DNA of 64,000 nt, taken from contig CM097882.1 of assembly GCA_044892505.1 (NCBI GenBank), forward strand, positions 213,218,001 through 213,282,000, in the 5' to 3' direction. Under the pieces are notes generated by a model. The model was given only the letters and a program-made list of their open reading frames with translations, made no database searches and had not been told where the DNA came from. This stretch comes from Schmidtea nova (Eukaryota). The position numbers and the translations under genes are program-made. Shown here one piece after another: positions 3,841-59,548 of this stretch; position 1 is the first letter of the stretch, and each line of letters begins with the position of its first letter.

Positions 3841-3940
3841 ATTGAACGTGCATTTTCTTTTCTCTGATTGAACGTGCATTTTCCTTTTATATAACTGGTT
3901 GAACGTGCGTTTTCTGTTATCTAATTGAACATGCATTTTC
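3841..3940. repeat. Four degenerate copies of TTGAAC(G/A)TGC(A/G)TTTTC at about 27-31-nt spacing
   Basis: Read directly from sequence. Confidence 0.7.
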
Positions 3941-6395
3941 CATTTTTTTATTATTATAACCTATTTTTTTAAATATATCCATATTTTTAATTTAATTATA
4001 TATATATATTATATAATATTTTTAATTAATATCTAATTAATATATAAGTTATANNNNNNNNNNNNNNNNNNNNNNNNNNNNNNNNNNNNNNNNNNNNNNN
4101 NNNNNNNNNNNNNNNNNNNNNNNNNNNNNNNNNNNNNNNNNNNNNNNNNNNNNNNNNNNNNNNNNNNNNNNNNNNNNNNNNNNNNNNNNNNNNNNNNNNN
4201 NNNNNNNNNNNNNNNNNNNNNNNNNNNNNNNNNNNNNNNNNNNNNNNNNNNNNNNNNNNNNNNNNNNNNNGTACTTACTAATTGAATTAAAAATAAATTC
4301 AGTTCTAGTGTTTAATATGGTACAAATTTCTTTCTTGGTTTTCCTATCTTTCAGTTTTTTTACTTTTGTAATAAATTTCCTTCGTTCTTGATTATTTAAT
4401 TTTCTAATCTTTCTTTAAATATTTATTTGTCAAATTCCTATAGGAATTCTCTTTGAAATATTTAATTTTCATAATATTTATTTTTCAAATGCTATTATTA
4501 CATGTTTGAAGCCCTAAAAATAAACACACTTTACACTTCATTCAACTTTATTTCCATTCATAACTCAATTAAGATAAAAACAATTGAACAGCAAATGAAA
4601 GAGAGACAACCGACATGCGCCCGCAACAAAATACCATAAAAGTTGAATTTTTACAAAGGTATTAAAAACGAAAGTTTTAATTTCTTTAATAATATTCTTC
4701 CAGTGAAATAATCTTTTAGCCAGTTCTGTACTTCTTTTGACTACTTGATCCCCTTTAATATTATGATGAAATTCTAATTTTTTAAACTTGTCCTTTGTTA
4801 GTCAACTTCGACTTTTTTTATCCCGGTTGTTATCAATCACCTTTACGTTTCTACATTTTAAAGGTGTTTCGTGCTATATCTCACATTGCTCATAGTTTGG
4901 TCTACTGAGAAAATGTGCATTGCTATGCAGCTCCTCGGATCTATCCTCCATCTTGAAATCGTAGATTTATAATTCCGTAATCCATGTAAAACAATAAGAT
5001 TCATCCAGGTTTTCCACAATTCGAAGCCAGCCAAGTAAGTGCTTTGTGGTCAGTCCTTATAGTAAATTGCTTTCCCATCAAATAATGTTTGAATTGTTTA
5101 GCAAATGTGTAGACAACTGGTAATTAATTTTTGTTGTTCAGTATTTCAGTTCCGAATTCGACAACGTTTTAGAAGTAAACATCACAATTTTGTCTCCACC
5201 TTGCATTTGACTAAGTATACCTTCGAGATTACTAGGACAGGCATCAGTATCAAAAATAAATTTTCCTTCTTTTATGGAATAGGCAAAGACTGGAGCTCTT
5301 GTTAGCAGATACTTTAGTCTAGTGAATATTAAATATTTTTTTTCTTCAGTTCAGTTTATTCAATTTTTAAGTGCTTTCTACTATTTTTCCTGGGATCATC
5401 CAGGGAACTCACCACTTTGGAGAAATTATGAACAAATTTCCTAACATAATTACAAAAAGCTCTAAATGAACGTAAGTCTAAAAAACATGGTTTATTTCAT
5501 TTAAGCACCTTTTCGACTTTCTTTGGCTCTGTTTTAATACCTTTATCTGCAATAAGATGATCCAAATGAAACTTCTTGTTGCAAAAAATTGAACTTTTAG
5601 GTTTTAAATTTTCACTTGGTTCTGTCAATCTTTCAAGCACGGCTCTTACTCTTTCTAGATGATGTTCAAATGTACTTCCACATATAAAAACATCGTCGAG
5701 GTATATAAAACATTGTTGCCAATCTTCATTCCCAAAGATCATGTCTATCAATCATTAAAAGATTGCTTCTAAAGATGACAGTCAGAATGAAAGTTTGTTG
5801 AATTCAAACTGTTCTCGTGTAGCTGTAAAAGTATGTTTCTATTTATGCACCATCTTCTAGCTCAACATTATAATAATCGTTTGATAAAGCGAACAGTTTA
5901 GATCCTTCCTAAGAATCACAAAGTTGTGTTGCTTCTGGAATTACATAAATTGGTCTCCTGGTTAATGAATTCAGTTTTCTATAGTTGACACAAAGTCTTA
6001 GATTACCATTTGTCTTAGTAATACAAACTAAAAGGGTTTTCCATAAACTTTCTCCTATCCACACGGGAACTCTTCTTGATGGCACAGCCATAAGATAATC
6101 ACGGTTAGTTTTATATGATGTTTTATCATCTGACAACATCCATTATCTGCGCCTGATTGCCTAAAAATGTGAGAAAATTCCTGAACAAAGTTAATTAAAT
6201 CTTTACGATGATTAGTCAGTGTAAAAGTATTCTTATTCAGTCGTTCGATCTAGTTTTCTAGGACTAATCCTAATTCAGTGCCTTTAAACAATTTTCGTTC
6301 ATTGTCTGCCAAACTGTATAGCCTGACTGGAATTTTTTTATTTTTCATTTAGTTCAACCGGTGCATTGGTAACTATTATACCCAATTCTATAAAC

Positions 6396-6398
<3 letters not shown>

Positions 6399-6436
<38 letters not shown>
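6399..6436. repeat. (TA)n microsatellite
   Basis: Direct read. Confidence 0.95.
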
Positions 6437-6437
<1 letters not shown>

Positions 6438-7105
6438 CAAAAACTCCTGGTTTAGCTCGAAAGTCATCGCAGCCAATTGATCCCTTCACAAAATATACTT
6501 TATCACTATTTAAAACTACTGTTTCATCTAAAATTACACTCAAGGAACAATGCTGAGTATTTTCTCTATTAACACTCACATCCAGATTTATTTGATTAGT
6601 GCTTTCCAGTTTCCCGACACATCACATTTTATTTTAGAAACAAACGGAATATGCTTATTATCTATAAGACAAAAAAACATTTTCTGGCACAATTTGAATT
6701 CTGTTTGTTTTCATAGTCCTAATTCCTATTATCATACTAAGGAAAATTTCATCAACAAACTTAAATTTTAACTGTTTCTCAAATTTACCAAGTTTCATGT
6801 TAATAGTAAATTCACCGACCGTGTTAATTGGCGGACCATTTGCGCAAAATTTTACTTTTTCTAAATTTAAGAAATCTATCATTCAGTTTTAGTTGTTTAA
6901 CATGTTCATAATCTATAATATTTGATTCTTCTTCACTACCAATTTAAAAGTGAGTATTACTTTCCACCGACTTCTAATTTTGTAAGAAATTTATTCTGAG
7001 CTGGTTTGGAGTGACTCCAAATTTTAATTTTTCGCTCTTTTTCGCATTTTTTAATTTCTTTGTTTATTGATAAATTGAGCTATATTTTCTGTTTCCTTTG
7101 TATAT

Positions 7106-9688: not shown

Positions 9689-10052
9689 GTAATTGGAATA
9701 ATAATTTTTTGTAGCATTATCTTATTTTTTTCGACTAAATCTTTCTTCTAAATATTTTTTTGCTCAAGAATAGCCCAACAATAAGTACAATTCCTATTAT
9801 ATTATAAATTATATATATACACACACACACTCATATGATTTTCTGCTCATAAATAATGAAAAATAGGTTTAATGTCGTTTAGATATAAAAAGATGTACCT
9901 TCTCCTCCCAACACCATAATATTTCCAAGTATTAATTTCTGATTATCACATCTCTTAAGAAAAGTGTTTCTACCACTGAAGAAACAAGAACATCTGAACG
10001 AGAACCTGGAGTAATGCATTCAATTTACAAAACAACATATTATCTTTATTAA

Positions 10053-10286
10053 CCCTTTCAATTTTTATTTTAATAATTCATGTAGTATTTATAACACAAA
10101 ATATTTATTGCTAATTTAGTTTGACGGGAAATTAAAAAACTCATAAAAACTATTGCTGCACACTAAATAAGTAAAATAAAATTATAAATAGCTTACTTGG
10201 CAATTCCGAGCACAGCACATATAAAAACACAATTAGTAATTATTAGAAATTCTCTGGGACAATATGTCCCTACAGTATTGAAAGGG
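10053..10286. mobile_element. piggyBac-type MITE (234 bp)
   Basis: TTAA|CCCTTTCAAT ... ATTGAAAGGG|TTAA; perfect 10-bp TIR with TTAA on both sides. Confidence 0.85.
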
Positions 10287-10396: not shown

Positions 10397-11105
10397 CAGG
10401 TATACCTTGCTCATACGGCGGGTTCGGTTCCAGATCACCGCGGTATGGCGGGTCACTTACTTTTTTTCACTCGCTCCCACGGTGTAGTTAAGCAACGGGC
10501 CAATATTATTTTATATAATTAAAAATTAAAAAACCAATTTTTATATACTTAGTTTTTTAAATATTGGGACCCAAATTCTTTTAGGGTCTCCAACTTATAT
10601 CGTTTTCTAATCATTGTAGCACTGGAGTAGCATTTTTAATTTCTTTTAAAAATTTATCTTTTGAGTTAATAACGGTACTCACTGTTTGCCGAGCTAGGCC
10701 TAGCCTAAGGCCTATTTCAGTGTTCGTAAAACCTTGCTCATGCAATGTTATCATTTCTAATTTTTTAGCCAAAGTAAGTGGCTTCCTACTTTTCTTTTCA
10801 CTAGGTTTAGGGCCATAGCTATATGAGTACGTATATTAATATAGATAGTAATACGTAATACAGCATCGAAGTTGAGAGCTATGAACAAACGCGTGCTAAC
10901 ACGATTGAAACAAGCTGTTGAATGCTGCGTGGCGGCGGAGTGTAGAACGATGACGTGTTGTTATTTTTGTTCCGCATTAGCGAAACGCTATAAAATATTT
11001 TTTGGCAGTGATGCATTGAGCCATGCGCTTTTCATGTAATTTTTTTGCGACCGCAGTATGAGCGAATCACCGTAAAGCAAGCGCCGTATGAGTGAGGTAT
11101 ACCTG
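10397..11105 (-). mobile_element. Internally deleted pogo/Tigger element
   Basis: 24-bp TIR CAGGTATACCT(TG/CA)CTCATACGGCG. Minus strand encodes [58 protein letters not shown] (Tigger CENP-B/psq HTH). Confidence 0.85.
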
Positions 11106-11899: not shown

Positions 11900-13300
11900 A
11901 CCACTGAGGTCCTCCCTGTACCAGATCTCATCTCGATCCCCGATCTCCCAGATAGAGAACGGCAAATTGGACTTTCTTTTCGGTTCGCCACGCTCTTGCC
12001 TTAGCGTTTATCTTTTGACTGACATTCATAAGTAGGTCCTTTAGGGGGTCTAACACTCTCAGACGCTGTTTCGACTCTTAACTTGTCTCTTCGGACTCAG
12101 GAAATTTTTCTCGCTCCCCTTGGTTTTCTTCTAGGAATTCTTCCCTATACATAAGGATAGCTTAAGCTAAACAAAATATAATAATATTAATTAGTCCTGG
12201 ATTTGAGGACTTCTCAACTTTGTACATTATCAACCAATCATGATTTTATTAAATTCACGAGTATTTGTCTATCCATAAATATTTTACTAGCGGATGTTTA
12301 GAACTACGCAATCTAGTAGTAGACTTTGTGTTAGCAGAGCTCACAAATTCACAATCTTATTCATTATCGTGGTGTTCAATGGATATTCAGTGGATTTGAT
12401 CATTGGTAATGAGCAATTTCATTTAATCAGCTGACGTTTCGCAAATAATATTCGAATGTATATCGTCGTCTCAATCGACGTACCTGTATAGCATCGAATA
12501 GTAATCAAACCTTCGTGATAAATTCCTTCTACCGGTTAGAAAATCAGAAGACTCTTTCCGACGATTTCGAGGTATTGGTCATGTTCATTTAATATAATGA
12601 TTACACTTTTGCTCCGGGTGTATGCCTATCCTTACTACAGTGGATCACACTTGAATTATTCCCTCGTAGCCGATTGCTTTTGGATGTTCCAGCACAATAT
12701 CAGTTTATTCCAACTTTTGGCTATCATAAAGGGAGTGATCTAATTGGGTTTGTGCTACTCTGGCTGACCCCAAATCTCAGTGCTGTTCTCCCGGCTATCC
12801 ATATGCAATTCACGCCCCTTTCAGTTGATTATCATGTCTCAGCAGAGACGGTAAATATTTAACAGTGTTGTTTCCTTTTGAACTTTTCAAATTTACTAGA
12901 AATAACTGCTTTATTTGATATATTTTATAGCTATGTGGGTGGTGGGGGTAGATTAGTACGAATTTAACTTTTTACCCAGTGGATGTTAGTCGATCCATTA
13001 CCATTAGAATCAAACGTTAGTGCCCTTTTTCTGAAAAAGTTTGTCGATATCATCGTTATCCTCTCCCTACCGGATTTTTTATCAACCTTCGATACCCTAT
13101 TAACCTCAGTTAAATAAATTATATAATTTATTTCAATTTCTCCACATGTGCACCCTTCTCATTTCTCGTCTGTCTTTAGCCAAAGTTTATTTAAAAACAC
13201 TCACCATACTATGAAGCTCTAAAAGCCCCACTAGTACGCTTTCACTCTCGCGGCATGATTCCACAGAGAATGCTTTTATCGACTTTAAACAAGATATGAA
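11900..13300 (-). mobile_element. Possible very degenerate Penelope-like remnant
   Basis: Only faint minus-strand traces resembling the RT thumb (TNFFRK...TFDS) and GIY-YIG spacing (C.HYI..T). Confidence 0.25.
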
Positions 13301-13746
13301 AATAAAATACAAATAGACACATTAAATGAACATAACAAAACCATGGGGTCAATGACTGTATAACAACAAAATAAAAATAAAAATAATTTCGTATTACCAT
13401 AGCAAGATTTAGATCAAAATGAACCGTTTTTAATAAATAGACTGAGACTTTTAATTGCCTAATTATGATTGTGAATACTTTCTCGTGTGATGTTGACCTT
13501 GTGGTATTTCGTTTGTTAGTTAGTTGTAGTTTTGGTAGTCGTGTTCGTTATTTAACTGGTTTTAGCTTCCGTATTTATACTGATTTAGCTCTCATGTTCA
13601 GCCAATCAGCTTTGATTCTAAACTTAATCCGTGGTAGGTTCAGGTTTTATTAATTTTGTTTATGTTTTTATTTTATCAGCATTTCCGACCAGCTGGATCA
13701 TAGTCTAAGTAATTGTCCAATTACTTATACTATTATGTTTGATTTA

Positions 13747-15647: not shown

Positions 15648-16289
15648 GTGAAAGTTTCGGTCAAATTAATGGTTGATTATAATTATGTTATGAATGTTAA
15701 TGAGGAAATTCGAAATGATGAATTGAATGAATTCATAGTCGAAGTGGATATTACGTCTTCGTTTGGAGTTCAAGAGAAGATATTCAATGGTGGTGAGAGA
15801 ATGGTTGCATCAATTCAATGGCCAACTCTGATTGAAATAACGAATTCATTGAATCAAAATGTGTTGAAAGATAAAAACATATTAATGTATAAAGCGAACA
15901 AGAGTGATATTATATATGGCTTACGTAGAATAAATGTTCCCAATGAATATGTGCACCAAGTTGTAAAACGAACATTTTCTGTATTGAGTGATTATAGTCG
16001 TGAAATATATGTCTTATCGCGATTATCACCCAGCTGTTATCTGAAACAAGATCTCAATGATGATTTCCCGATAATTCGATGCTTATTTGTTGATCGAATT
16101 TCAAATTCGAACATAAAATTGCTTGAGCCACCAAATCTTTTGGTTGGATTACCGGCACAAATATTGACTTACTGTGCATCACACGGATTGAATGGAATTA
16201 TCAATGCTGTTTATTTTGTTATGGAAATGAATAAAAATTATTATATGGACGTTCAATCGATGATTTTCCATCCGTGCCTAAAATTGTGA
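15648..16289 (+). CDS. PSMG1: Chimeric intronless ORF with a proteasome assembly chaperone 1 fragment and a shared tail module
   Basis: FPIIRCL...KLLEPPNLLVGLPAQILTYC matches PSMG1 (P.LR.L...LLEQPNIV..LPAAVLSYC). Ends VYFVMEMNKNYYM, homologous to the tail of 33972-34679. First ATG at 15669. Confidence 0.65.
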   Translation: MKVSVKLMVDYNYVMNVNEEIRNDELNEFIVEVDITSSFGVQEKIFNGGERMVASIQWPTLIEITNSLNQNVLKDKNILMYKANKSDIIYGLRRINVPNEYVHQVVKRTFSVLSDYSREIYVLSRLSPSCYLKQDLNDDFPIIRCLFVDRISNSNIKLLEPPNLLVGLPAQILTYCASHGLNGIINAVYFVMEMNKNYYMDVQSMIFHPCLKL

Positions 16290-24486: not shown

Positions 24487-26179
24487 CAGTGGCGTAGCGA
24501 AGAGGGGGCAAAGGGGAAGAGCTGCCCGGGCCCACAGTCTTATGGGCTCCAGAAAGAGTCTGAGGATCATATATAATTAGTGTTATTTAATATTTATTCT
24601 CGACTTAACTTTTTCAAATCACGAAAACAATAACGTTGAAGATGACGCCAATAGATCTAGCTATAAGACTGGAGGACATAATGATGGTGATGAATATGAC
24701 CCCCGAAGTGGTATTCCTGCAGTTCTCTTGTTCAATGACATTGGTTACTTAAAATTCGACCAAAGGTCACAACTAGCAGTAGTGTTACGAAAAAACATCG
24801 CACTGAACTGATAACCTGTGGAGATTCAGTATTTCAATACGAAGAAGACCCGTTTACACTCAATGAAAACTTGGTTTTCCAAGCGCAAGAAAGCTACAAA
24901 AAGAAAGCTATACCGATCACTGTTAAGCGAGAATCTGAAACCGGATGGAGTGCTAGAGTGGAGGCCGTCAAAGCAATTTATGAGGGGTTACATGAACTAG
25001 TGAAACTGCTAGAGACACTATCAGATGATAGGAATCAGTCAAACGATACTGCAACTGGCGCAGAAAGGTTGCTAGCGAATAATTTGGAATTCAATTTTCT
25101 TGTGTTGCTGTATTTCTGGAATGACATCCTACGAAGAATTGATCTGGTTCAGAAACGTCTTCAGGATCCTACCATGAATTTCAAGGATGCAGTATCTGAT
25201 CTCAAAGCATTGGAAATTCAAGTTAACTTAACACACGATGATTTATGTGAGTGTGTAATTAAAAGTGCAAAGAATAGATGTGCAGAATGGGGCGTAGAAG
25301 TTCAACGCCGAATGAGGAGAAGACAAATGCCAGTAGAGTTGGCTCGAGATGCCAGGTTTTCTTCAGAAGAGGAAATTGCGCGTGTTCTAAAAAGTGTTAT
25401 ATATTGACTTCAACAAAAAATGGCAACTAGATTCATTCGTCTCAATGAGTTGGATTCAAAAATTGGATTTTTATTGGATGTTCGGATTCTGTTCAAGGGA
25501 ATGGATTTGACTTCTCTTCGCAAAGATTTCTTTGACCTTGCAAACTTTTATGACACTGACGTAAATGGGAGCGAACGTTTCAACGAAATTTGCGACTGTA
25601 AAATGTTGCTTACTACGAGAGGTAATGTTTTAACATCAACCCCTTTGGATCTAATTACTTTCATCGTGTCTTATGGGGACGATGCTTTTCCAAATTTGCA
25701 AATTGCTTTACAAATTCTCTTAACAGTTGCAGTGTCAATAGCCAGTTGTGAGCTTTCCTTCTGTAAGCTGAAGCTTATTCTTTCATATTTAAGAGCGTCG
25801 ATGGGACAAGATCATCTATGCGATCTCGCGGTTCTCAGTGTAGAGAAGGAAACACTGAAAAAGATAGACTTTGATGATATAATTGACAAATTTGTGAGTG
25901 TGAACGCAAGAAAAATGAATTTTGCCAGCATGAAGACTCTTTGAAAGGGCGGTTAAAATTTATTATATAGTTTATATTGTAATTGTGATAGATAATATTA
26001 TAATAAATATGGTTGTATAATAATTAAAATTTATTTAACTCTTATGCATGACAATTGAACTATTGGAGTTATTAATTCTGTCACCCAATTAATCTCCTAT
26101 CCCTATGTAACAAGTTTTGTGTAGGGGGCGCCAAATTTAAACCTTACCCTGGGTGCCACATAGTCTCGCTACGCCTCTG
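24487..26179 (+). mobile_element. Internally deleted hAT with a transposase C-terminal pseudogene (24871-25944)
   Basis: TIR CAG(T/A)GGCGTAGCGA; perfect 8-bp TSD GGTATTAA; ETGWSARVEAVKAI and AVSIASCELSFCKLKLILSYLRASMGQ. Confidence 0.92.
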
Positions 26180-44070: not shown

Positions 44071-46594
44071 CAGGGGCGGCCAACGTGAGGCCCGCGAAGA
44101 CTTTTTTAATGGCCCGCTTAACATTTTTGAATTTTCAAACATTTAACTTCAAACTGTATTTAATAATTTTTTTAATTTATTCTTATTTTTTGATAATACG
44201 TTCATGAAAAATAAATTAATTCCTATTTAAATTAAAAAATTTCAACAAAATTAAAAATAATAATGATTAAAAAAATAAAAGTTTCTCTCAACTGAATCAA
44301 AAATTAATCAATCGTAATATTTAAATTTTAAATAATCAAACTCTGTATAAAATGTTTTAGTTGTGGTTGATACTTTGACTGAAACATTTTAAAAATTATA
44401 AAACGTTTTGATCAAAAACATTATTGAAAAACTTGAAAAAGTGTACTAGTTCTAATCAGTCAAAATGCCCCAAAGTAAAATAATGACGGCAAAAAAGAAA
44501 AGAGAAAATGATTTGCTTTTGAGATGTTTTCAAGATCAATGGGAAGAACAATTCTTCTTTACACAAACAGTTTCATCAAAACCCATTTGTTTGATCTGCT
44601 CAGAAGTACTAGCAGTTGTAAAAAAATACAACGTGGAGCGACATTTTCAACAATGCCATAAAGAAATTAACTTTAAGTTTCCAATTGGATCAAGTTTGAG
44701 AAGTGAATTTATTTTAAAACAAAAAACTGCCCTGTCATTACAGAAGAACTTTTTTGTTAAAAAGAAAGAAGAAATGACCAAAATGATGACAGCATCTTTT
44801 CAAATTTCACTTCTGCTTGCACAGAAGAAGAGAAATTTCTCTGATGGAGAAATTGTAAAAGAGTGTTTGTCAATTTTTGCTGAAAACAGCGGACACAAGG
44901 GTTTGAGTTTACAAATTGAAAACATGGCACTTTCTCGAAATACAGTTATGATAAGAGTAGAAGACATGGCAAGTGATGTATCACAACAAATCATTCTTGC
45001 TTCGTCTCTTTCCAAATACCTCTCAATTGCAATTGATGAAAGCTGTGACAGGACTGACAATGCTCAATTACTTGTTTACATAAGATGTGTAAATGAAAAC
45101 TTTGACGTTGTGCAAGATCTTCTTGGTCTCTACCAGCTTCAAAAAACAACAAAAGGATCGGACATCTTTCAAGTATTAAAAGAGTGCATCGAGAGTTCTA
45201 CAAGTAACGGTCACAAGCTTGAATGGGACAAATTAGACAGCATTTGCACTGATGGAGCTCCAGCAATGGTGGGAAAAAATTCTGGTTGTGTTTCACTTCT
45301 GGAGAATTTCTTACAACGAAAACTATTTAAATACCATTGTATCATTCATCAAGAAATGCTCTGCACAAAGGACATGAAATTCAGCCATGTCATTGACACC
45401 GTTGTACACTGTGTAAATAAAATAAGAGCCCGTGCATTGCATCGAAGAGAGTTAAGGTCACTTTTTGAAAATGAAACCAATGAATATGGAGAACTTCTTC
45501 TACACTGCTCTGTTTGATGGCTTTCAAAGGGGAAAATGCTGGAGCGCTTTTTTCTACTAAAAGACCAATGTCTGCAATTTTTGGAGTCTAAAACCGAATT
45601 GCCAACAGAGTGTATCCAGTTAAAAAACAAATCTTGGGTGTGTGATCTTGCTTTTCTTGTTGATCTCACTAATTACTCGAATTGTCTCAACACTGGATTA
45701 CAAGGAGAAAATGCTTTATTTCCCACACTTTTCAATCAGATCAACTCTTTCAAAGCAAAACTGAAATTGTTTGCTAACAGCCTATCTCAGAAGAAAGTTG
45801 CTCTTTTTCCTACACTTCAAGGTTATCAACAGGAAAATAAATCTGATTTGGATTATGAGAAATACAAATCAGCCATCCTTGATTTGTCAAAATCATTTGA
45901 TTCAAGATTTACTGACTTTGAATCTGTCAAAAACAACCTACTCCTTTTCATCAATCCATTTTCAATATCTGAGATTGAAATTGATATTTATCCTCCTAAA
46001 ATCCAGTTAGAAATATCCGAAATTCAGAACCACTCAGGATTGAGAGTTAAATTCCAAGAGTTGTCTGGATCGCCAGTTTCTCCTGATCTGACAGCCTTCT
46101 GGAAAATAGTTCCCAAAAGTGATTTTCCAGAACTTCATGAAATCGCACTGAGATTTGTTTGCAAATTTGGAACAACTTATATTTGTGAAAAGACTTTTTT
46201 GACCATGAATTATGTGAAAAGTAAATACAGAACTACTTTGACAGATAAACACTTGGCCAACCTGTTATTACTATCAACAACAAAAATCAATCCTAACATT
46301 GAGAAACTAGTAAAGTCAATTCAAGTACAAAACCGCATTGACAAAATTGGTCAGAAATACGTTAGTAATAATTATCAAATTAAATATTTATGTTTTCACA
46401 TTTCATATTTGTATTTCTCTAATGTTATCATTCATAAATAAATTATATTGTATCTTAATTTGTTGATTTTATTGATTATTTTGTTGTAACATTTATAAAA
46501 AGTAATGGATATATTTTATAGATTTATGTTTTGGCTCGCCAAACTTTTTGGGTAAAAGTTTTTGCCCACTTGTGAAAAAGGTTGGCCACCCCTG
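44071..46594 (+). mobile_element. Full-length hAT of the Buster/Charlie group
   Basis: TIR CAGGGG(C/T)GGCCAAC; target copies TTCTAAAA / CTCTAAAC. Confidence 0.92.
44465..46344 (+). pseudogene. Buster/Charlie-type transposase with one in-frame stop and a probable terminal frameshift
   Basis: N-terminal CLIC...HF zinc finger, IDESCDRTD, CTDGAPAM, HCIIHQE, V*WLSKG (consensus RW), TYICEKTF. ORFs 44465 and 45536 are in frame. Confidence 0.92.
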
Positions 46595-53030: not shown

Positions 53031-53929
53031 TAATAAGTTTATATTTCGTATTATTTATTATTCTTACATAAATATTTTTCAAAGAGCCATCCAAAATAAA
53101 GACTCCATTTTGAAATTTTTATAATTTTTTTTGAAAATGAAAAGTAACAGGAAAAGTTCTTTGTTTTAAATTTAATGTTTATTCATTTTTCAAAATAATT
53201 TAATTTTTAAAATTTTCTTGAATAGAGAATCCGTAAAATGAGAGACACAACTTCAAGTTCTATGTTATCGAAAACTTGTAAAAATTATATTTTATAAAAT
53301 ATTTTTCTGATGTATTTCTCAGCCTTTTTGAAAGATTTTTTATGTTATCTTCCTAAAATAATTTTTATATCATGTTAAAAAGATTTGAAAATAAAACTTA
53401 TTATTTAAACAAACTTTCAATCCATTAATCAAAATAAAAATTTCTATAAATTTCATTTAATATTTTTTCAAAATTAAAATTTCTTAAATTGCAATAAAAT
53501 TTTATAAAAACTTTTTTCAAAAAAAAACTTTTTTTCAAAACTTTTTATAAATTCTTATAAATTTCTGAATTGCTATTTTAATCAAAGGACTGCATATCAC
53601 ATCCCCTTCTTTAAAATATTTCTTCATCTTTTCAACATTTCTTTGTACTGTCTCTCCCGAATCATCTCTCAACAGCTATCACCTGTCGTGTATTTTCAGA
53701 ATAATCTCGTACGCCCCTTCATATATATTTATTTCTTTCGTTCTTGATTCTAACTTGATTAAAAGATATTTTTGTTGGTATCTGTTCAGGTGCTCCTCCT
53801 TTTAGCTATGACTTTCCGATTTGCGGCCCATACCTTGTGTGCCATCATTCTCTAAATATTTTACGTCAAATATTACATCTGCTGGACTCTTACCAATTTA
53901 CTTCTGTATTGTTGCATTCAGTGTGAATT

Positions 53930-54511: not shown

Positions 54512-54949
54512 TATTTTAACAAACTTTCAATCCATTAATTAAAATAAACATTTCTATAAATTTCATTTAATTTTTTTTGAAAATTAAAATTTCTTAAATT
54601 ACAATAAAAACTTTATAAAAACTTTCACAAATTCTTACAAATTCTTACAAATTTCTAAATTGCTATTTTAATCAATTGACGGAATATCACAAGCCCCTCG
54701 TAGTGTTACTTATTTAAATTAATTGTGTCTGAAATGTTTATTTAAAATGAATTTCATAACATCAAAATAAAGAATTTAATTTATTATACTTCAATTAAAA
54801 AAGAAAACAAATAAAAGTTTACGAGTTAGACTCGTGTTTACTCACAAGCAGGTAAATATAATCTATAAATCCTGTCAAATGACGTTCGCTTTTTTAAATT
54901 TATATAACATTATATACGGGTGTACGGAATATATATATATATATATATA

Positions 54950-55713
54950 TATAGTGCCTCAGAATTTTCAATTTAATTATGACATTAATTTAATAATTAA
55001 ATTATTATTGTAATATTATATTGAATGAACTTTTTTTCTTTTTGTTTTAAATATGCAAAAAATGCACTTTTTCACTTTCAAAAAAACCAACATGACGAAC
55101 ATGCTCCAAAAAGAATTTACAATTATAAAATAAAAATCTTAAATGAAAGCCAATGAAATTTTTTAAAATCCAAATGAGGCGACGATTCAGAGATCTACGG
55201 AAATATAGAGTGAATAGAAGCTATCTAAATCCAATACTAATACTTTTAAACTATCGGATTGTGTCAGTAACAATCATCAATCATTGAATATGGAATTCTT
55301 TCATCCTCATTTCAGTTATGTCCTCCACCTGGAAGGACAAATGCTCATTTGTTTCAACAATTTCATAACAACTCCCAATATTTCTCGTTACTTAACATTC
55401 GCAATGCTACTTCGATTTTTAGTGGCTGCAATATGAACCAGATTAATGAGTTTTCTGATGTCGTCCCTATGGATGACAATCAGACCCAGCAATCGTTTAT
55501 GCATAGTGAAATCAATAAGCAACTCAACAAAAACCATCGAATCCCAAACACAATATGTGTAATGTTCAAACAATGCCAAATCGCAGCATAATAAATCAAA
55601 ATCAACTGGTTAGGCTGTCAAAGATTAGCGATTACGAAATCTAAGGAATTCATTCATCAACTATTGTAGATTGGAATATAATGTATTTCGTTATTAATCT
55701 TTTTTTTTTACTA
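54950..55713 (+). mobile_element. Solo-LTR-like element, family A copy 3 (ORF decayed), between (TA)n tracts
   Basis: Starts TAGTGCCT; CCAACATG start context and coding region align with 49756-49380 on the minus strand. Confidence 0.7.
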
Positions 55714-55856
55714 TATATATATATATATATATATATTGAACTGATAAAAAGTAACTAAGTGATACTTAAAAGTTTTTATTCAATTTGAATAATGATGAAT
55801 GTCTTAATATAGAATATTAAAACAAATCATTATTAAATATATAACATTCTTCCCCT

Positions 55857-58628
55857 CTAGGTTAAGTATCGTGACGGTACTTTTACTTGTCTTCCAGATC
55901 GAGTAGTCGATTCGCTTCCTGCTGGTTCTGTTGACGACAAACTGTCTTCAAATGTAGTCTCGGAATGCCCGAACGTTTCTAGGGTGTCTTTCCCACTTTC
56001 AAGCTCTGTATCAGCTGAGCTATTTGAACATGGTGCAAGGTGACTCGTCGATACTGTGTCTGTCCTTCCATCTCTGTGTTGTACTCTTGCATAGTACGGC
56101 GATATTGTCTCGATCAGTTTGACCTCATCGACAAGTGGATCATTTTTATAGCGAATGTGTCGTTTTAGTAGGATGTTTTGATCAGTATTTCGTAGAAATT
56201 CTGGTAAATCATATCCAATTACGGACGCTCGATCAAATTTAAACATTCGATCGTGAGGTGTCGAATTAGTAGAGACGCACAGCAGTGATCTCATTGATGA
56301 AAGGGATACGTCCAATACTTTTTCCCAATGCTCCTTGGTCATATTGTTTTCCTTTAGGGCTAAGTTTATCGTTTTCAATAGAATTCCGTTAATTCTTTCG
56401 CATTGACCGTTACCTTGAGGATGATAAGGCGTTGTACGTGTTTTCGCCACTCCGTGTTTAATTAAAAAGTCATTGAATTGTCTGCTTTCGAATTGTGCTC
56501 CTCTGTCGCTATGTACGGACGAAGGTGAACCAAACAAGGTAAATAAACTGAACATGTGTTTTATTACGGTGTCAGAATCGACGTTAGCACAAGGAAAGGC
56601 AAAAGGGTACCTGGAATATTCGTCGACAACGACGAGCAAGAAACGATTAGATGTTGTGCTTTGTAGAGGTCCCACAAAGTCGATTGAAATTCTATCCCAG
56701 GGTTTCATTGATGAGATTAGGCTTCTACTTGGAGGTTTGAAGTATCTTGGTTTTATCTGTTTGCATGTTTCACAGTTTCCAATAACGTTTTTAATGTCTT
56801 GGATGGAGTATGGTAGATTCTTCGCTCGGCAGTAATGATACATACGAGTGATACCGGGATGACATAAATTTCCATGAAGTAACTTTAAAGAGTTAGAACT
56901 AATTATTGAACTACATCTAGATAATGCGTCAGCTGGTATGTTGTCGGGACCTGGTTTGTATTTTATGTTGAATCTCAGATCTGATAATTCAATTCTCCAT
57001 CGTGCGATCTTTTCATTCTTAGTTTTGGATAATTTTTGCCGATTGAATATTAACGAAACTGACTTCTGATCTGTAAGAATATTAAAGAAAGGTATCGAAT
57101 GTAAAAGGCTACGCCATTTTTGGGTACATTCGACGATTGCCGCGGCCTCTTTTTCAATGATGGAGTGATTCCTTTCTGACTTTGAGAGTAAACGAGAAAA
57201 GAATGCAATCGGTCGGCCGTTCTGACTCAATACTCCGCCCAATGCATGGTCGGATGCATCGGTTTCAATATCTTAAGGTTGATCTTGAGTTGGGGAATGT
57301 AGTGAAGCAGTTTGTAATTTGGTCTTCAGTAAATGTATTGTTTCGATGCATTCATTTGGCAGTGTGTTGCTTGACGTGAGTTCTTTACGAGAATCAGTTA
57401 GTATTCTCGTGTATTCTGAGCATCGTGGGATCCATTTTGCGTAATATGCAAAAAAACCTATTAAACGATCCATTTCTTTTGTAGACGCTGGAATTGGAAG
57501 GTCCACGAGAGCCTTGAAACGGTCCGGATCTGGCCTTATTGATTGGTTTTCAATTACGTGTCCTAGAAATGATATAGACGTTGTAGAAAACTTACTTTTG
57601 CTTTCGTTTATTTGTAGATTTTTTAATTTAGAGGCCTTTAGAAATTCTTTAAGGTTTTGATCGTGCTCTTCTTTATTTTTACCACCAATTATTATGTCGT
57701 CGAGATAAGCAAACGTTGACTGAAGATTGTGCTCTTGGATGAATTTGTCGATGATTCTCTGAAAAATTGGGACTGCGTTGGTGCAACCGAAAGGTAGTTT
57801 GGTAAATTCATATAATTTACCCTGTGCTTCGAAAGCAGTTAGTTGATAGTCTGATGGTTGTATTTGGACCTGACGATATGCTGACTTGAGCTCTACCTTA
57901 CCGAAAATTGTGTTCTTTGCTATTTTAAAGAGCAGATCGTCAATTCTAGGCATTGGGTATGAGTCAAGATTAGTGTACCAATTGATTGTATTTGAGTAAT
58001 CTATTACGAGCCGTTGTTTGCTGTTCTGGTTGATGGTGAAGCACTGTGCTCGCCAAGGACTTTGGCTTTCTTGAATGATTCTGTCGGAGAGGAGTCTCGA
58101 TATTTCTTGGCTGATAAACTATGAATTTTGTGAGGACCGTCGTGATGGCATAGCGATTGGTTTGATTTTACTTATGTCAACTCATGGCAAGAGCGGATAC
58201 GTGTCACATGTCATTGTCTTGAGAGCTAAAGATAGTGTGATCGGATGTCTATCGCCACCAAGTTCTAGATTAATTCTCGAGTGTCTTTTTAGGATGTCCA
58301 TTCCAATTATCACTTTAGTGACCAGTGATTTGGAGACTTGGAAATGTGCCTCGTAGACCTTGTTTGCCAACATTAACTTTCCATAGTAGGTACCTGAAGT
58401 TGAGGATATCGATTTATTCGCAAGGAGAACCTGTTTTACTTCTTTGTGATTAAAGGTTAGATTCTTACTATTGAGGAATTCTTCTGACACAAAGGACAAA
58501 TCTGATCCCGTATCAATTAATGCTCGAACTGAGTTTCCATCGAGAAAAGCCTCAACTAAAGAATTTTGGGCATTGATTGTTGCTAATCTAGAAATAGAGC
58601 AACTCTGAATCGGTCCGTCAACGTCCAT
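55857..58628 (-). pseudogene. pol (PR-RT-RNase H-IN), with stops and a frameshift
   Basis: LIDTGS, AYLDD, TDASD, HHCC zinc finger, IDFVG, HSDRG, ERIN; no chromodomain seen. Confidence 0.92.
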
Positions 58629-58638
58629 GTTTGTTTCT

Positions 58639-59342
58639 TCAGTAGAGATAGACGCTATTTTTTTTAGCTAAACATACCGGACTCCAGTGACTTTTCTTCT
58701 GGCATTTGTTGTAAGCAGAGTTTCTTGCTGGGCAACTAGATCGCGAATGTTTAGATTTACCACACCATTGGCAGCCAGTAGTCATTGCTGATGTTGTATA
58801 GAGTGATCTGTTTACAGTTGGCTCTGAATGCTGATCCTGTCGAAGATAGTTAGAATCTTTTATTGCAGATTCTAGAGACATCGCACGTGTAACCATGACT
58901 TGGAGGCTGACGTTTTCTAACTCCAAGAGTCTTTGTCGAATTTCATTTGAGCTAATTCCAAAGACTAATGCGTCGCTTATCATTAGATTATGATGTTCTT
59001 CTGCAGAGAGAGCTGGAGTTGGACACTTGTGAACTGCAACTGTGAGTCTTGTTGTAAAGTCTTCGATTGTTTCATTGTTCTGATCTTGAACCGCACGAGA
59101 GTTGATGAGGACCTTTTGACATGCCTTGCTATTAACTTTTGCATTGCTTCTTTGTAATCGCTGCAATGTTCCAAGGTGATGAAAATGTTTGATGGCACCA
59201 ATGAGAGAAGAGCTTCTAAACTGTCGTTGTCTGATAATGCCAGTCTTCTGATGTATGTCTCGAACACACGCTTCCATTGGAGAAATTCATTTTCAGAGGC
59301 ATTTTCCGGAAGAGCTTTTTGAAAGATTTTCAGATTCATCAT
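58639..59342 (-). pseudogene. gag, frameshifted
   Basis: WKRVFETY, EIRQRLLE and tandem zinc knuckles CQWCGKSKHSRSSC / KCQKKSHWSPVC. Confidence 0.85.
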
Positions 59343-59467
59343 TATTCAAATTGAATAAAATTGAACTGATAAAAAGTAACTAAGTGAAACTTAAAAGTTT
59401 TTATTCAATTTGAATAATGATGAATGTCTTAATATATAATATTAAAACAAATCATTATTAAATATAT

Positions 59468-59548
<81 letters not shown>

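What the first reader, a model, noticed from the sequence alone, without database searches (positions are those of the whole stretch)
59334..59425. Gypsy element whose primer-binding position is a perfect 27-nt complement of its own LTR (self-priming candidate)
Seen: I find no TGG-starting tRNA-type PBS after the 5' LTR. Instead 59334-59360 (ATTCATCATTATTCAAATTGAATAAAA) is the exact reverse complement of 59399-59425 within the LTR, 38 nt away, and it covers the gag ATG. The LTR segment follows TATA-like sequence and contains the AATAAA, so it is plausibly the R region. Known: Tf1 of fission yeast primes reverse transcription with the 5' end of its own RNA annealed to the PBS (11 nt); this is proposed for the Tf1/sushi group. 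Inference: a similar mechanism with a longer duplex in a chromodomain-less, Mag-like animal element; the duplex could also gate gag translation.
Basis: partly seen in the sequence, partly recalled or inferred. Interest (0 to 1): 0.82.

Follow-up and report, generated by a model that had tools for sequence, protein, structure and literature searches.

The report
Self-complementary primer site in gypsy retrotransposon
A decayed 3.7-kb gypsy-type retrotransposon has, exactly where a tRNA primer site should lie, a perfect 27-base complement of its own terminal repeat; eight related animal elements carry shorter, co-varying versions, which points to priming by the element's own RNA instead of a host tRNA.

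Summary
Window 59334-59360 is the perfect reverse complement of 59399-59425, with none expected by chance.

The element lies on the minus strand at 55737-59471. It has 110-nt LTRs, a purine tract, and a PR-RT-RNaseH-IN order with no chromodomain. It carries 2 frameshifts and 3 in-frame stops.

The downstream arm begins one base after the LTR's terminal CA, which is the primer-binding position. No TGG-type site follows the LTR.

The key new result comes from relatives. Eight other elements with a related gag show the same layout: CA, one base, then a perfect complement of an LTR stretch 29-52 nt upstream. They come from a beetle, a sea cucumber and metagenome contigs. Arm lengths are 10-17 nt. 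The arm sequences differ between elements but always stay complementary: 90 of 90 pairs in the first ten positions.

In 8 of the 9 elements the LTR arm ends in a poly(A) hexamer.

Two relatives lack the layout. One is a decayed copy. The other is more distant and has a TGG-type site.

A Tf1-like self-priming site is therefore the best reading. The 27-nt length and the overlap with the gag ATG were not seen in any of the eight relatives that share the layout. The transcription start is unknown, and no experiment supports the reading. I found no published report of such a site in animal gypsy elements that lack a chromodomain.

The parts
55737..59471 (-). whole LTR retrotransposon (3735 nt), inserted in a (TA)n microsatellite
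   Evidence: Direct repeat 55735-55847 / 59360-59472, 98%, with TG..CA ends read. Coding order PR-RT-RNaseH-IN.
59362..59471 (-). 5' LTR, 110 nt
   Evidence: Starts TGTT and ends CA in sense orientation.
55737..55846 (-). 3' LTR, 110 nt, 2 differences from the 5' LTR, neither in the arm
59399..59425 (-). arm A: LTR stretch complementary to the primer-binding position; contains AATAAA at 59400-59405; candidate self-primer
59361..59398 (-). 38-nt loop: the rest of the LTR (inferred remainder of R plus U5) and a one-base spacer at 59361
59334..59360 (-). arm B: candidate primer-binding site, starting 1 nt after the LTR's CA and covering the gag ATG codons
55774..55800 (-). copy of arm A in the 3' LTR
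55847..55858 (-). 12-nt purine tract directly 5' of the 3' LTR; overlaps the pol stop codon
   Evidence: Read. The same arrangement occurs in L004, L011 and L012.
58639..59342 (-). gag (broken: 2 frameshifts in the gag part); CCHC-type knuckle at its C-terminal end
   Evidence: No Pfam hit. Relatives found by profile search.
55857..58628 (-). pol (broken: 3 in-frame stops): protease, reverse transcriptase, RNase H, integrase; no chromodomain
59472..59545 (.). (TA)37 flank on the 5' side of the element
55712..55736 (.). (TA)12 flank on the 3' side of the element. The flanks fit a 5-bp target duplication but cannot prove one.

Best explanation
Arm B is the element's minus-strand primer-binding site, and the primer is the element's own RNA (arm A, in the R part of the LTR), as in Tf1. 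The following steps are inferred. Transcription starts at or before arm A. The 5' end folds back on arm B. The element's RNase H cuts at the loop-side end of arm A. The freed 3' end is extended through the 29-52 nt loop (U5 plus the rest of R). That short strong-stop DNA then moves to the 3' R. When the plus strand later copies the attached RNA primer, the primer-binding site is rewritten from the LTR sequence. This would explain why the arms are perfect, why they end abruptly, and why their length varies (10-27 nt). On this view the 27 nt here record a longer primer, that is, a start site further upstream. Because arm A carries the poly(A) hexamer, the same pairing would also hide the 5' copy of that signal and leave the 3' copy free. 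What the sequences show directly is the position, the perfection, the co-variation, and the lack of a TGG-type site. The cut, the start site and the copying step are not shown.
For: Position: arm B starts exactly 1 nt after the LTR's CA in all nine elements. In L011 the LTR ends are fixed by identical LTRs and a 5-bp target duplication. Perfection and co-variation: arms are 10, 12, 12, 12, 15, 15, 17, 17 and 27 nt. In pairs 1-10, 90 of 90 cells are Watson-Crick, with 2-3 pair types at positions 4-10; beyond each arm, positions are mostly mismatched. The background chance of an arm of 10 nt or more at a fixed position is 0.0058. No room for another site: the gag ATG lies 2-36 nt after arm B in relatives and inside it here, and there is no TGG. 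Contrast: an unrelated gypsy element in L009 and the distant gag relative in L010 have TGG-type sites right after the LTR. Relatives with a single intact 1206-1239 aa ORF (L007, L012) carry the feature. For the mechanism: in Tf1 the first 11 nt pair with the primer-binding site and RNase H cuts between nt 11 and 12 (PMC7175516, PMC5341516).
Against: There are no transcript data, so the start site is unknown, and TATA-like strings show no fixed spacing to arm A. In L006 the nearest TATA-like run would place the start inside or after arm A. If the 75-nt end redundancy of L007 marks R, arm A lies 42 nt inside the RNA, not at its very end. L003, the closest gag relative, has only 6 perfect nt and no significant duplex, although that copy also lacks the gag ATG. 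In L011, arm A lies just upstream of the poly(A) hexamer and does not contain it. Host tRNAs could not be compared, because no tRNA gene occurs in the window or loci. Only one copy of this family was available.
Confidence: 0.65

Rival explanations
1. The hairpin is a leader structure whose job is to mask the poly(A) signal in the 5' LTR copy, or to serve packaging or dimerisation. Priming would be done in some other way.
For: Arm A ends in AATAAA or ATTAAA in 8 of 9 elements. Arm B exists only at the 5' end of the RNA, so only the 5' signal would be paired. The hairpins are more stable than shuffled sequence. An analogous poly(A) hairpin is known in HIV-1 (own knowledge).
Against: Masking alone does not require arm B to sit exactly 1 nt after the LTR in every element. 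No other primer site exists in the 2-36 nt before the ATG. In L011, arm A does not contain the hexamer. This role is compatible with self-priming and does not exclude it.
Confidence: 0.17
2. The stem mainly gates gag translation by burying the start codon.
For: In the window the two ATG codons lie inside a 27-bp stem of about -31 kcal/mol.
Against: In all eight relatives with the layout, the ATG lies 2-36 nt outside the arm. The overlap is therefore not a family trait and follows from the 15-nt extension together with a very short leader.
Confidence: 0.05
3. A host RNA (a tRNA, a tRNA fragment or another small RNA) primes at arm B, and the LTR match is incidental.
For: tRNA priming is the rule for LTR elements, and mosquito Mag elements use tRNA-Leu or tRNA-Ser (PMC3286476). 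Host tRNAs could not be checked here.
Against: Arm B does not start with TGG. It has only 4 G/C in 27 nt. It also differs between elements while always matching that element's own LTR. No single host RNA could fit them all.
Confidence: 0.05
4. The inverted repeat is a private rearrangement of this one decayed copy, or chance.
For: The last 15 nt of the arms were seen only here, and only one copy of the family could be examined. L010 shows that large inverted duplications do occur around such loci.
Against: The 12-nt core is shared letter for letter with L005, and the layout is shared with eight elements. Chance is excluded. A post-insertion event would have to copy 15 nt of the LTR, inverted, exactly in register with the existing core.
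Confidence: 0.08

Closest known systems
Tf1, Tf2 and Tj1 of fission yeasts (self-primed reverse transcription)
   Same: A primer-binding site directly after the 5' LTR that is complementary to the element's own LTR-derived RNA, with no tRNA-type site, and a fold-back geometry that places the primer's 3' end next to U5 (PMC7175516, PMC4600332, PMC5341516).
   Different: The yeast elements are chromoviruses of fungi with an 11-nt duplex that starts at RNA base 1, and the mechanism is shown by experiment. Here the hosts are animals, there is no chromodomain, the arms are 10-27 nt, the primer stretch usually carries the poly(A) hexamer, the loop is only 29-52 nt, and nothing has been tested.
[quoted passage not shown]
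   Same: [quoted passage not shown]
   Different: All the gypsy-type cases listed are chromoviruses of the Tf1/sushi-Tcn1 group. None is an animal element without a chromodomain.
Mag lineage of Ty3/gypsy (Mag, SURL, Jule, mosquito families)
   Same: Animal hosts, no chromodomain, short LTRs, and an LTR 5' end that fits the published Mag motif TGTNATRT (PMC3601003). Several relatives end in AACA as Mag LTRs do.
   Different: Mosquito Mag elements have tRNA-Leu, tRNA-Ser or tRNA-Arg sites and are 4.6-10 kb (PMC3286476). This clade is about 3.7-4.2 kb, has a single gag-pol ORF in intact members, and has a self-complementary site. Phylogenetic placement was not tested.
HIV-1 poly(A) hairpin in R (own knowledge, not checked here)
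   Same: The poly(A) hexamer sits in a stem at the 5' end of the genomic RNA, which is thought to limit its use there.
   Different: In HIV the hairpin is local to R and so is present at both ends. Here the partner strand lies outside the LTR and so exists only at the 5' end.
Conserved hairpin site of GalEa-like copia elements
   Same: A conserved structure at the expected primer-site position in animal and fungal elements that lack a tRNA-type site (PMC5445492).
   Different: That site is a local hairpin with no complement in the LTR, and its authors state that it does not fit the Tf1 model.

Membership tests
Ty3/gypsy LTR retrotransposon | pol domain order protease - RT - RNase H - integrase | tested here: met
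   Pfam hits on the minus-strand reading frames in that order. The same order occurs in intact relatives.
Ty3/gypsy LTR retrotransposon | Direct terminal repeats with TG..CA ends, and a purine tract before the 3' LTR | tested here: met
   110-nt LTRs at 98% identity. The purine tract is at 55847-55858.
Ty3/gypsy LTR retrotransposon | Target-site duplication of 4-6 bp | tested here: inconclusive
   Both flanks are (TA)n, so any odd-length duplication fits. The relative L011 has a clean 5-bp duplication.
Self-priming elements (Tf1 type), as a mechanism | The site directly after the 5' LTR is complementary to the element's own LTR, and there is no tRNA-type site | tested here: met
   27 of 27 nt, starting 1 nt after CA, with no TGG. 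Eight relatives show the same.
Self-priming elements (Tf1 type), as a mechanism | The complement begins at the first base of the transcript | not testable with these tools
   No transcript data are available, and the TATA spacing is inconsistent.
Self-priming elements (Tf1 type), as a mechanism | RNase H cut at the end of the RNA duplex, and strong-stop DNA carrying the RNA primer | not testable with these tools
   These are biochemical features.
Tf1/sushi group (chromoviruses), as a clade | Chromodomain at the integrase C-terminus | tested here: not met
   No Chromo hit at E of 0.01 or better in the window integrase or in four intact relatives.
Mag lineage | Placement in RT/RNase H/IN trees with the reference elements | not tested
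   No reference sequences could be brought in by the permitted routes. The named relatives are uncharacterised animal proteins.
Mag lineage | LTR end motifs: 5' TGTNATRT, 3' ...AACA (PMC3601003) | tested here: inconclusive
   The 5' motif fits. The 3' end of the window LTR is ...TTCA, not AACA. L009, L011 and others end in ACA.
Mag lineage | tRNA-Leu or tRNA-Ser primer site, as in mosquito members (PMC3286476) | tested here: not met
   No TGG-type site follows the LTR.

The most novel reading that the evidence does not exclude
A clade of compact gypsy elements without a chromodomain, spread across animal phyla, has given up tRNA priming for a self-primer that overlaps its poly(A) signal. The primer-binding site is rewritten from the RNA's 5' end at every cycle. 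Arm length (10-27 nt) would then be a sequence-level record of where transcription starts, and the 27-nt arm in this window would be a fossil of a start-site shift. If so, self-priming arose independently of the Tf1/sushi chromoviruses, or is older than they are.
Probability: 0.45. Interest if true: 0.72.

Novelty: new variant of a known kind. Interest (0 to 1): 0.62.

Why it matters
Self-primed reverse transcription has been shown only for fission-yeast elements. Among gypsy-type elements it has been predicted only for their chromovirus relatives, plus one plant copia lineage. A co-varying self-complementary primer site in animal gypsy elements without a chromodomain would widen the known range of the mechanism. 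It bears on the proposal that hairpin priming preceded tRNA priming (PMC3601003). It would also identify elements that small RNAs derived from tRNA 3' ends could not target through the primer site. In practice, annotation pipelines that look for a tRNA-type site will report 'no PBS' for these elements; a simple test for an LTR complement would find it.

Tried and rejected
Close copies of the family: none were found. The integrase word search gave at most 60% identity, and the gag word search gave one hit.

Collection scans: two scans of JGI metagenome contigs with gag patterns found nothing. The first was weakened because I included an out-of-frame ORF in the alignment. A scan of prokaryote genome contigs for contaminant copies also found nothing, and one alignment was too divergent to use.

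tRNA test: no tRNA genes occur in the window or in eight loci, so host tRNAs could not be compared. Only the TGG rule, base composition and the between-element differences could be used.

Rfam: no family reaches threshold in the window.

Promoter reasoning: TATA-like strings have no fixed distance to arm A, so no start site is claimed.

Structure-pair counting: the MAFFT alignment of the nine arm-loop-arm stretches aligned by poly(A) signal and shifted the registers, so it was unfit for the structure-pair counting tool. Pairs were counted by script instead.

Misleading loci: L010 first looked like an even longer complement, but it is a 163-nt inverted duplication in a rearranged tandem array and was set aside. 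The 114-nt LTR pair of L002 has no complement and does not belong to the 5' end that carries the arms.

Papers: Lin and Levin 1997, Levin's reviews and the original mag paper are not held.

Not done: IMG/VR was not scanned, so as not to pull in animal viruses. The third word search was not spent on identifying the host. Generic motif strings (poly(A) hexamers, TATA-like strings, TGG) used in scripts come from general knowledge.

Full report
THE OBSERVATION. The inverted repeat is exactly as described: 59334-59360 and 59399-59425, 27 nt, 100% complementary, 38 nt apart. The 27-mer has a third copy at 55774-55800, and shuffles expect none.

THE ELEMENT. A 113-nt direct repeat (55735-55847 and 59360-59472, 98%) brackets about 3.5 kb of minus-strand coding sequence. 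Trimmed to TG..CA, the LTRs are 59362-59471 (5') and 55737-55846 (3'), 110 nt each, so the element spans 55737-59471.
- A 12-nt purine tract (55847-55858) abuts the 3' LTR and overlaps the pol stop codon.
- Both ends lie in a (TA)n microsatellite, so the target duplication cannot be read.
- Pfam gives protease, RT, RNase H, integrase zinc domain and integrase core in the gypsy order, with no chromodomain. The gag reading frames match no Pfam family.
- Intact relatives have one 1206-1239 aa gag-pol ORF and are 46-47% identical. Against them, the window copy aligns almost end to end but has two frameshifts in the gag part and three in-frame stops in pol.
- It is a dead copy. Its two LTR differences lie outside the arms.

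WHERE THE ARMS SIT. In sense orientation, arm A occupies LTR positions 47-73 and ends with the AATAAA. The remaining 37 nt of the LTR plus one spacer base form the loop. Arm B starts one base after the terminal CA, the classical primer-binding position. No TGG follows the LTR for about 60 nt. The first gag ATG (59342) lies inside arm B. RNA starting at 59425 folds into the 27-bp hairpin at -32.1 kcal/mol, z = -6.7.

FINDING RELATIVES. No close copy exists in the searchable collections. A profile of the in-frame gag part plus its one word-search relative found 5807 gag relatives, and I fetched contigs for the best of them. I took these loci to be chromosomal or metagenomic copies of retrotransposons, not viruses. 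None was fetched by a virus name or accession, and none looked human.

WHAT THE RELATIVES SHOW. Eight further elements have the same layout: the inner 5' end in L002, plus L005, L006, L007, L008 (Diabrotica undecimpunctata), L009, L011 (Apostichopus japonicus) and L012. In each, the LTR ends in CA, one base follows, and then comes a perfect reverse complement of an LTR stretch 29-52 nt upstream.
- Arm lengths are 10, 12, 12, 12, 15, 15, 17 and 17 nt, against 27 in the window.
- The arm sequences differ between elements yet stay complementary. Counted from the loop, pairs 1-10 are Watson-Crick in 90 of 90 cells, with two or three pair types at positions 4-10. Beyond each arm, the positions are mostly mismatched.
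- In L011 the LTR limits are fixed independently, by 100% identical 194-nt LTRs and a 5-bp target duplication.
- L007 and L012 carry single long ORFs.
- Arm A ends in AATAAA or ATTAAA in 8 of 9 elements. In L011 the hexamer follows 5 nt later, ending 11 nt after the arm.
- The gag ATG lies 2-36 nt after arm B in the relatives, which leaves no room for a separate 18-nt tRNA site in several of them.

EXCEPTIONS AND CONTROLS.
- L003 is the closest gag relative (56-59% identical). Its LTR aligns with the window's, but it has only 6 perfect nt after the LTR and no significant duplex. It is about 10 nt shorter there and also lacks the gag ATG, so I read it as a decayed copy. It still counts against strict conservation.
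- L010 (gag about 29% identical) has a TGG-type site after an LTR-like end. Its long inverted repeat is a 163-nt rearrangement.
- A second, unrelated gypsy element in L009 also has a TGG-type site directly after its LTR.
- The layout is therefore a trait of one clade. Within it, RT is 38-54% and integrase 43-63% identical to the window. It is not a general property of such loci.

MECHANISM. [quoted passage not shown] A self-primer in R that pairs with the site is also drawn for Tf2, where a downstream start site gives RNA that cannot be reverse-transcribed (PMC5341516).

The geometry here is the same. The loop-side end of arm A faces the LTR-side end of arm B, so a cut at the end of arm A would give a 3' end that can be extended through U5 and the rest of R. 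Two arguments are mine, by inference.
- First, arm A must be in the transcript's 5' part. If transcription began downstream of it, the only arm A copy would sit near the 3' end, and cutting there would remove the R needed for the first strand transfer.
- Second, if the plus strand copies the attached RNA primer, the site is rewritten from the LTR each cycle. This predicts perfect arms with abrupt ends and variable length, which is what is seen. The window's 15 extra nt are then most simply a longer primer, from an upstream start. The 12-nt core is identical to that of L005, whose following bases do not match its LTR.

A second role is likely: masking the 5' poly(A) signal, because arm B exists only at the 5' end. 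Gating of gag translation is not a clade trait.

WHAT REMAINS UNSHOWN. The start site, the cut and the strong-stop product are all unshown. TATA-like strings give no consistent spacing to arm A. The 75-nt end redundancy of L007 stops 21 nt after the hexamer. If it reflects R, it would place arm A 42 nt inside the RNA, which would differ from Tf1. Host tRNAs could not be compared.

COMPARISON WITH THE LITERATURE. In the searchable literature, the self-priming gypsy-type elements are Tf1, Tf2, Tj1, several fungal elements, sushi, Tcn1 and the plant Tcn1 clade, together with the copia TAR lineage (PMC6934838, PMC6317226, PMC4600332, PMC3601003). Mosquito Mag elements have tRNA-Leu or tRNA-Ser sites (PMC3286476). 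I found no report of a self-complementary site in animal gypsy elements without a chromodomain, but subscription papers and Repbase could not be searched. Placement in Mag is plausible from LTR length and the 5' end motif (PMC3601003) but untested. I rate this a new variant of a known kind.

My first notebook entry, and the labels printed by one script, give the reading-frame pieces of the window element as the ORF tool listed them. The ends of such pieces coincide with breaks. This report gives gag and pol as whole parts and gives counts only.

Noticed in passing
L007:1-75 and 3904-3978: The contig's ends repeat each other over 75 nt. The repeat starts 42 nt before arm A and stops 21 nt after the AATAAA, the usual distance to a poly(A) site. 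If the contig comes from RNA, this would be R; if it is a cyclic assembly path, the break point is arbitrary.
   Followed up: partly
L009:2988-7143 (minus strand): A second, unrelated gypsy element with 100% identical 201-nt LTRs. A TGG-type primer site follows the LTR at once, and the gag ATG straddles the LTR/primer-site border.
   Followed up: partly
L010:6700-13700 (Cordylochernes scorpioides, CP092864.1): A tandem array of gag-like units (period about 1.5-1.8 kb) with a 163-nt, 97% inverted duplication at 9809-9971 / 10088-10250. The LTR-end plus TGG-type site is duplicated 33 nt apart.
   Followed up: partly
L002:4755-13510: A nested or chimeric locus. The 114-nt LTR pair (4755-4868 / 10777-10890) does not match the 5' end that carries the 17-nt arms (7025-7089). 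An 851-nt repeat (6184-7028 / 12689-13510) ends 4 nt into arm A.
   Followed up: partly
loops of L002, L005, L008, L011, L012 and window 59361-59398: A small stem-loop directly 3' of arm A recurs with different sequences, often starting (A/G)CCT. Its energies are weak. It might correspond to the extra stems that Tf1 needs, or to a poly(A) downstream element.
   Followed up: no
L003:70-110: In this relative the LTR itself holds a 10-bp local hairpin. One strand resembles the window's gag-start stretch and the other resembles the start of arm A. This suggests the same sequence pair has been placed differently.
   Followed up: no
window 55712-55736 and 59472-59545: The (TA)n tract that received the element is very unequal on the two sides (12 versus 37 repeats).
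   Followed up: no
window 44465-46441 and 24871-25944: hAT-transposase-like remnants: a Spin-doc-type zinc finger and hAT dimerisation domain hits.
   Followed up: no
window 15648-16289: An ORF with a proteasome assembly chaperone (PAC1) hit just above the Pfam threshold, possibly a host exon. The window is about 28% G+C throughout, and the host was not identified.
   Followed up: no
window 53402-53609 and 54512-54699: Two direct repeat segments, 83-88% identical and about 1.1 kb apart (families D2 and D4). Their nature is unknown.
   Followed up: no
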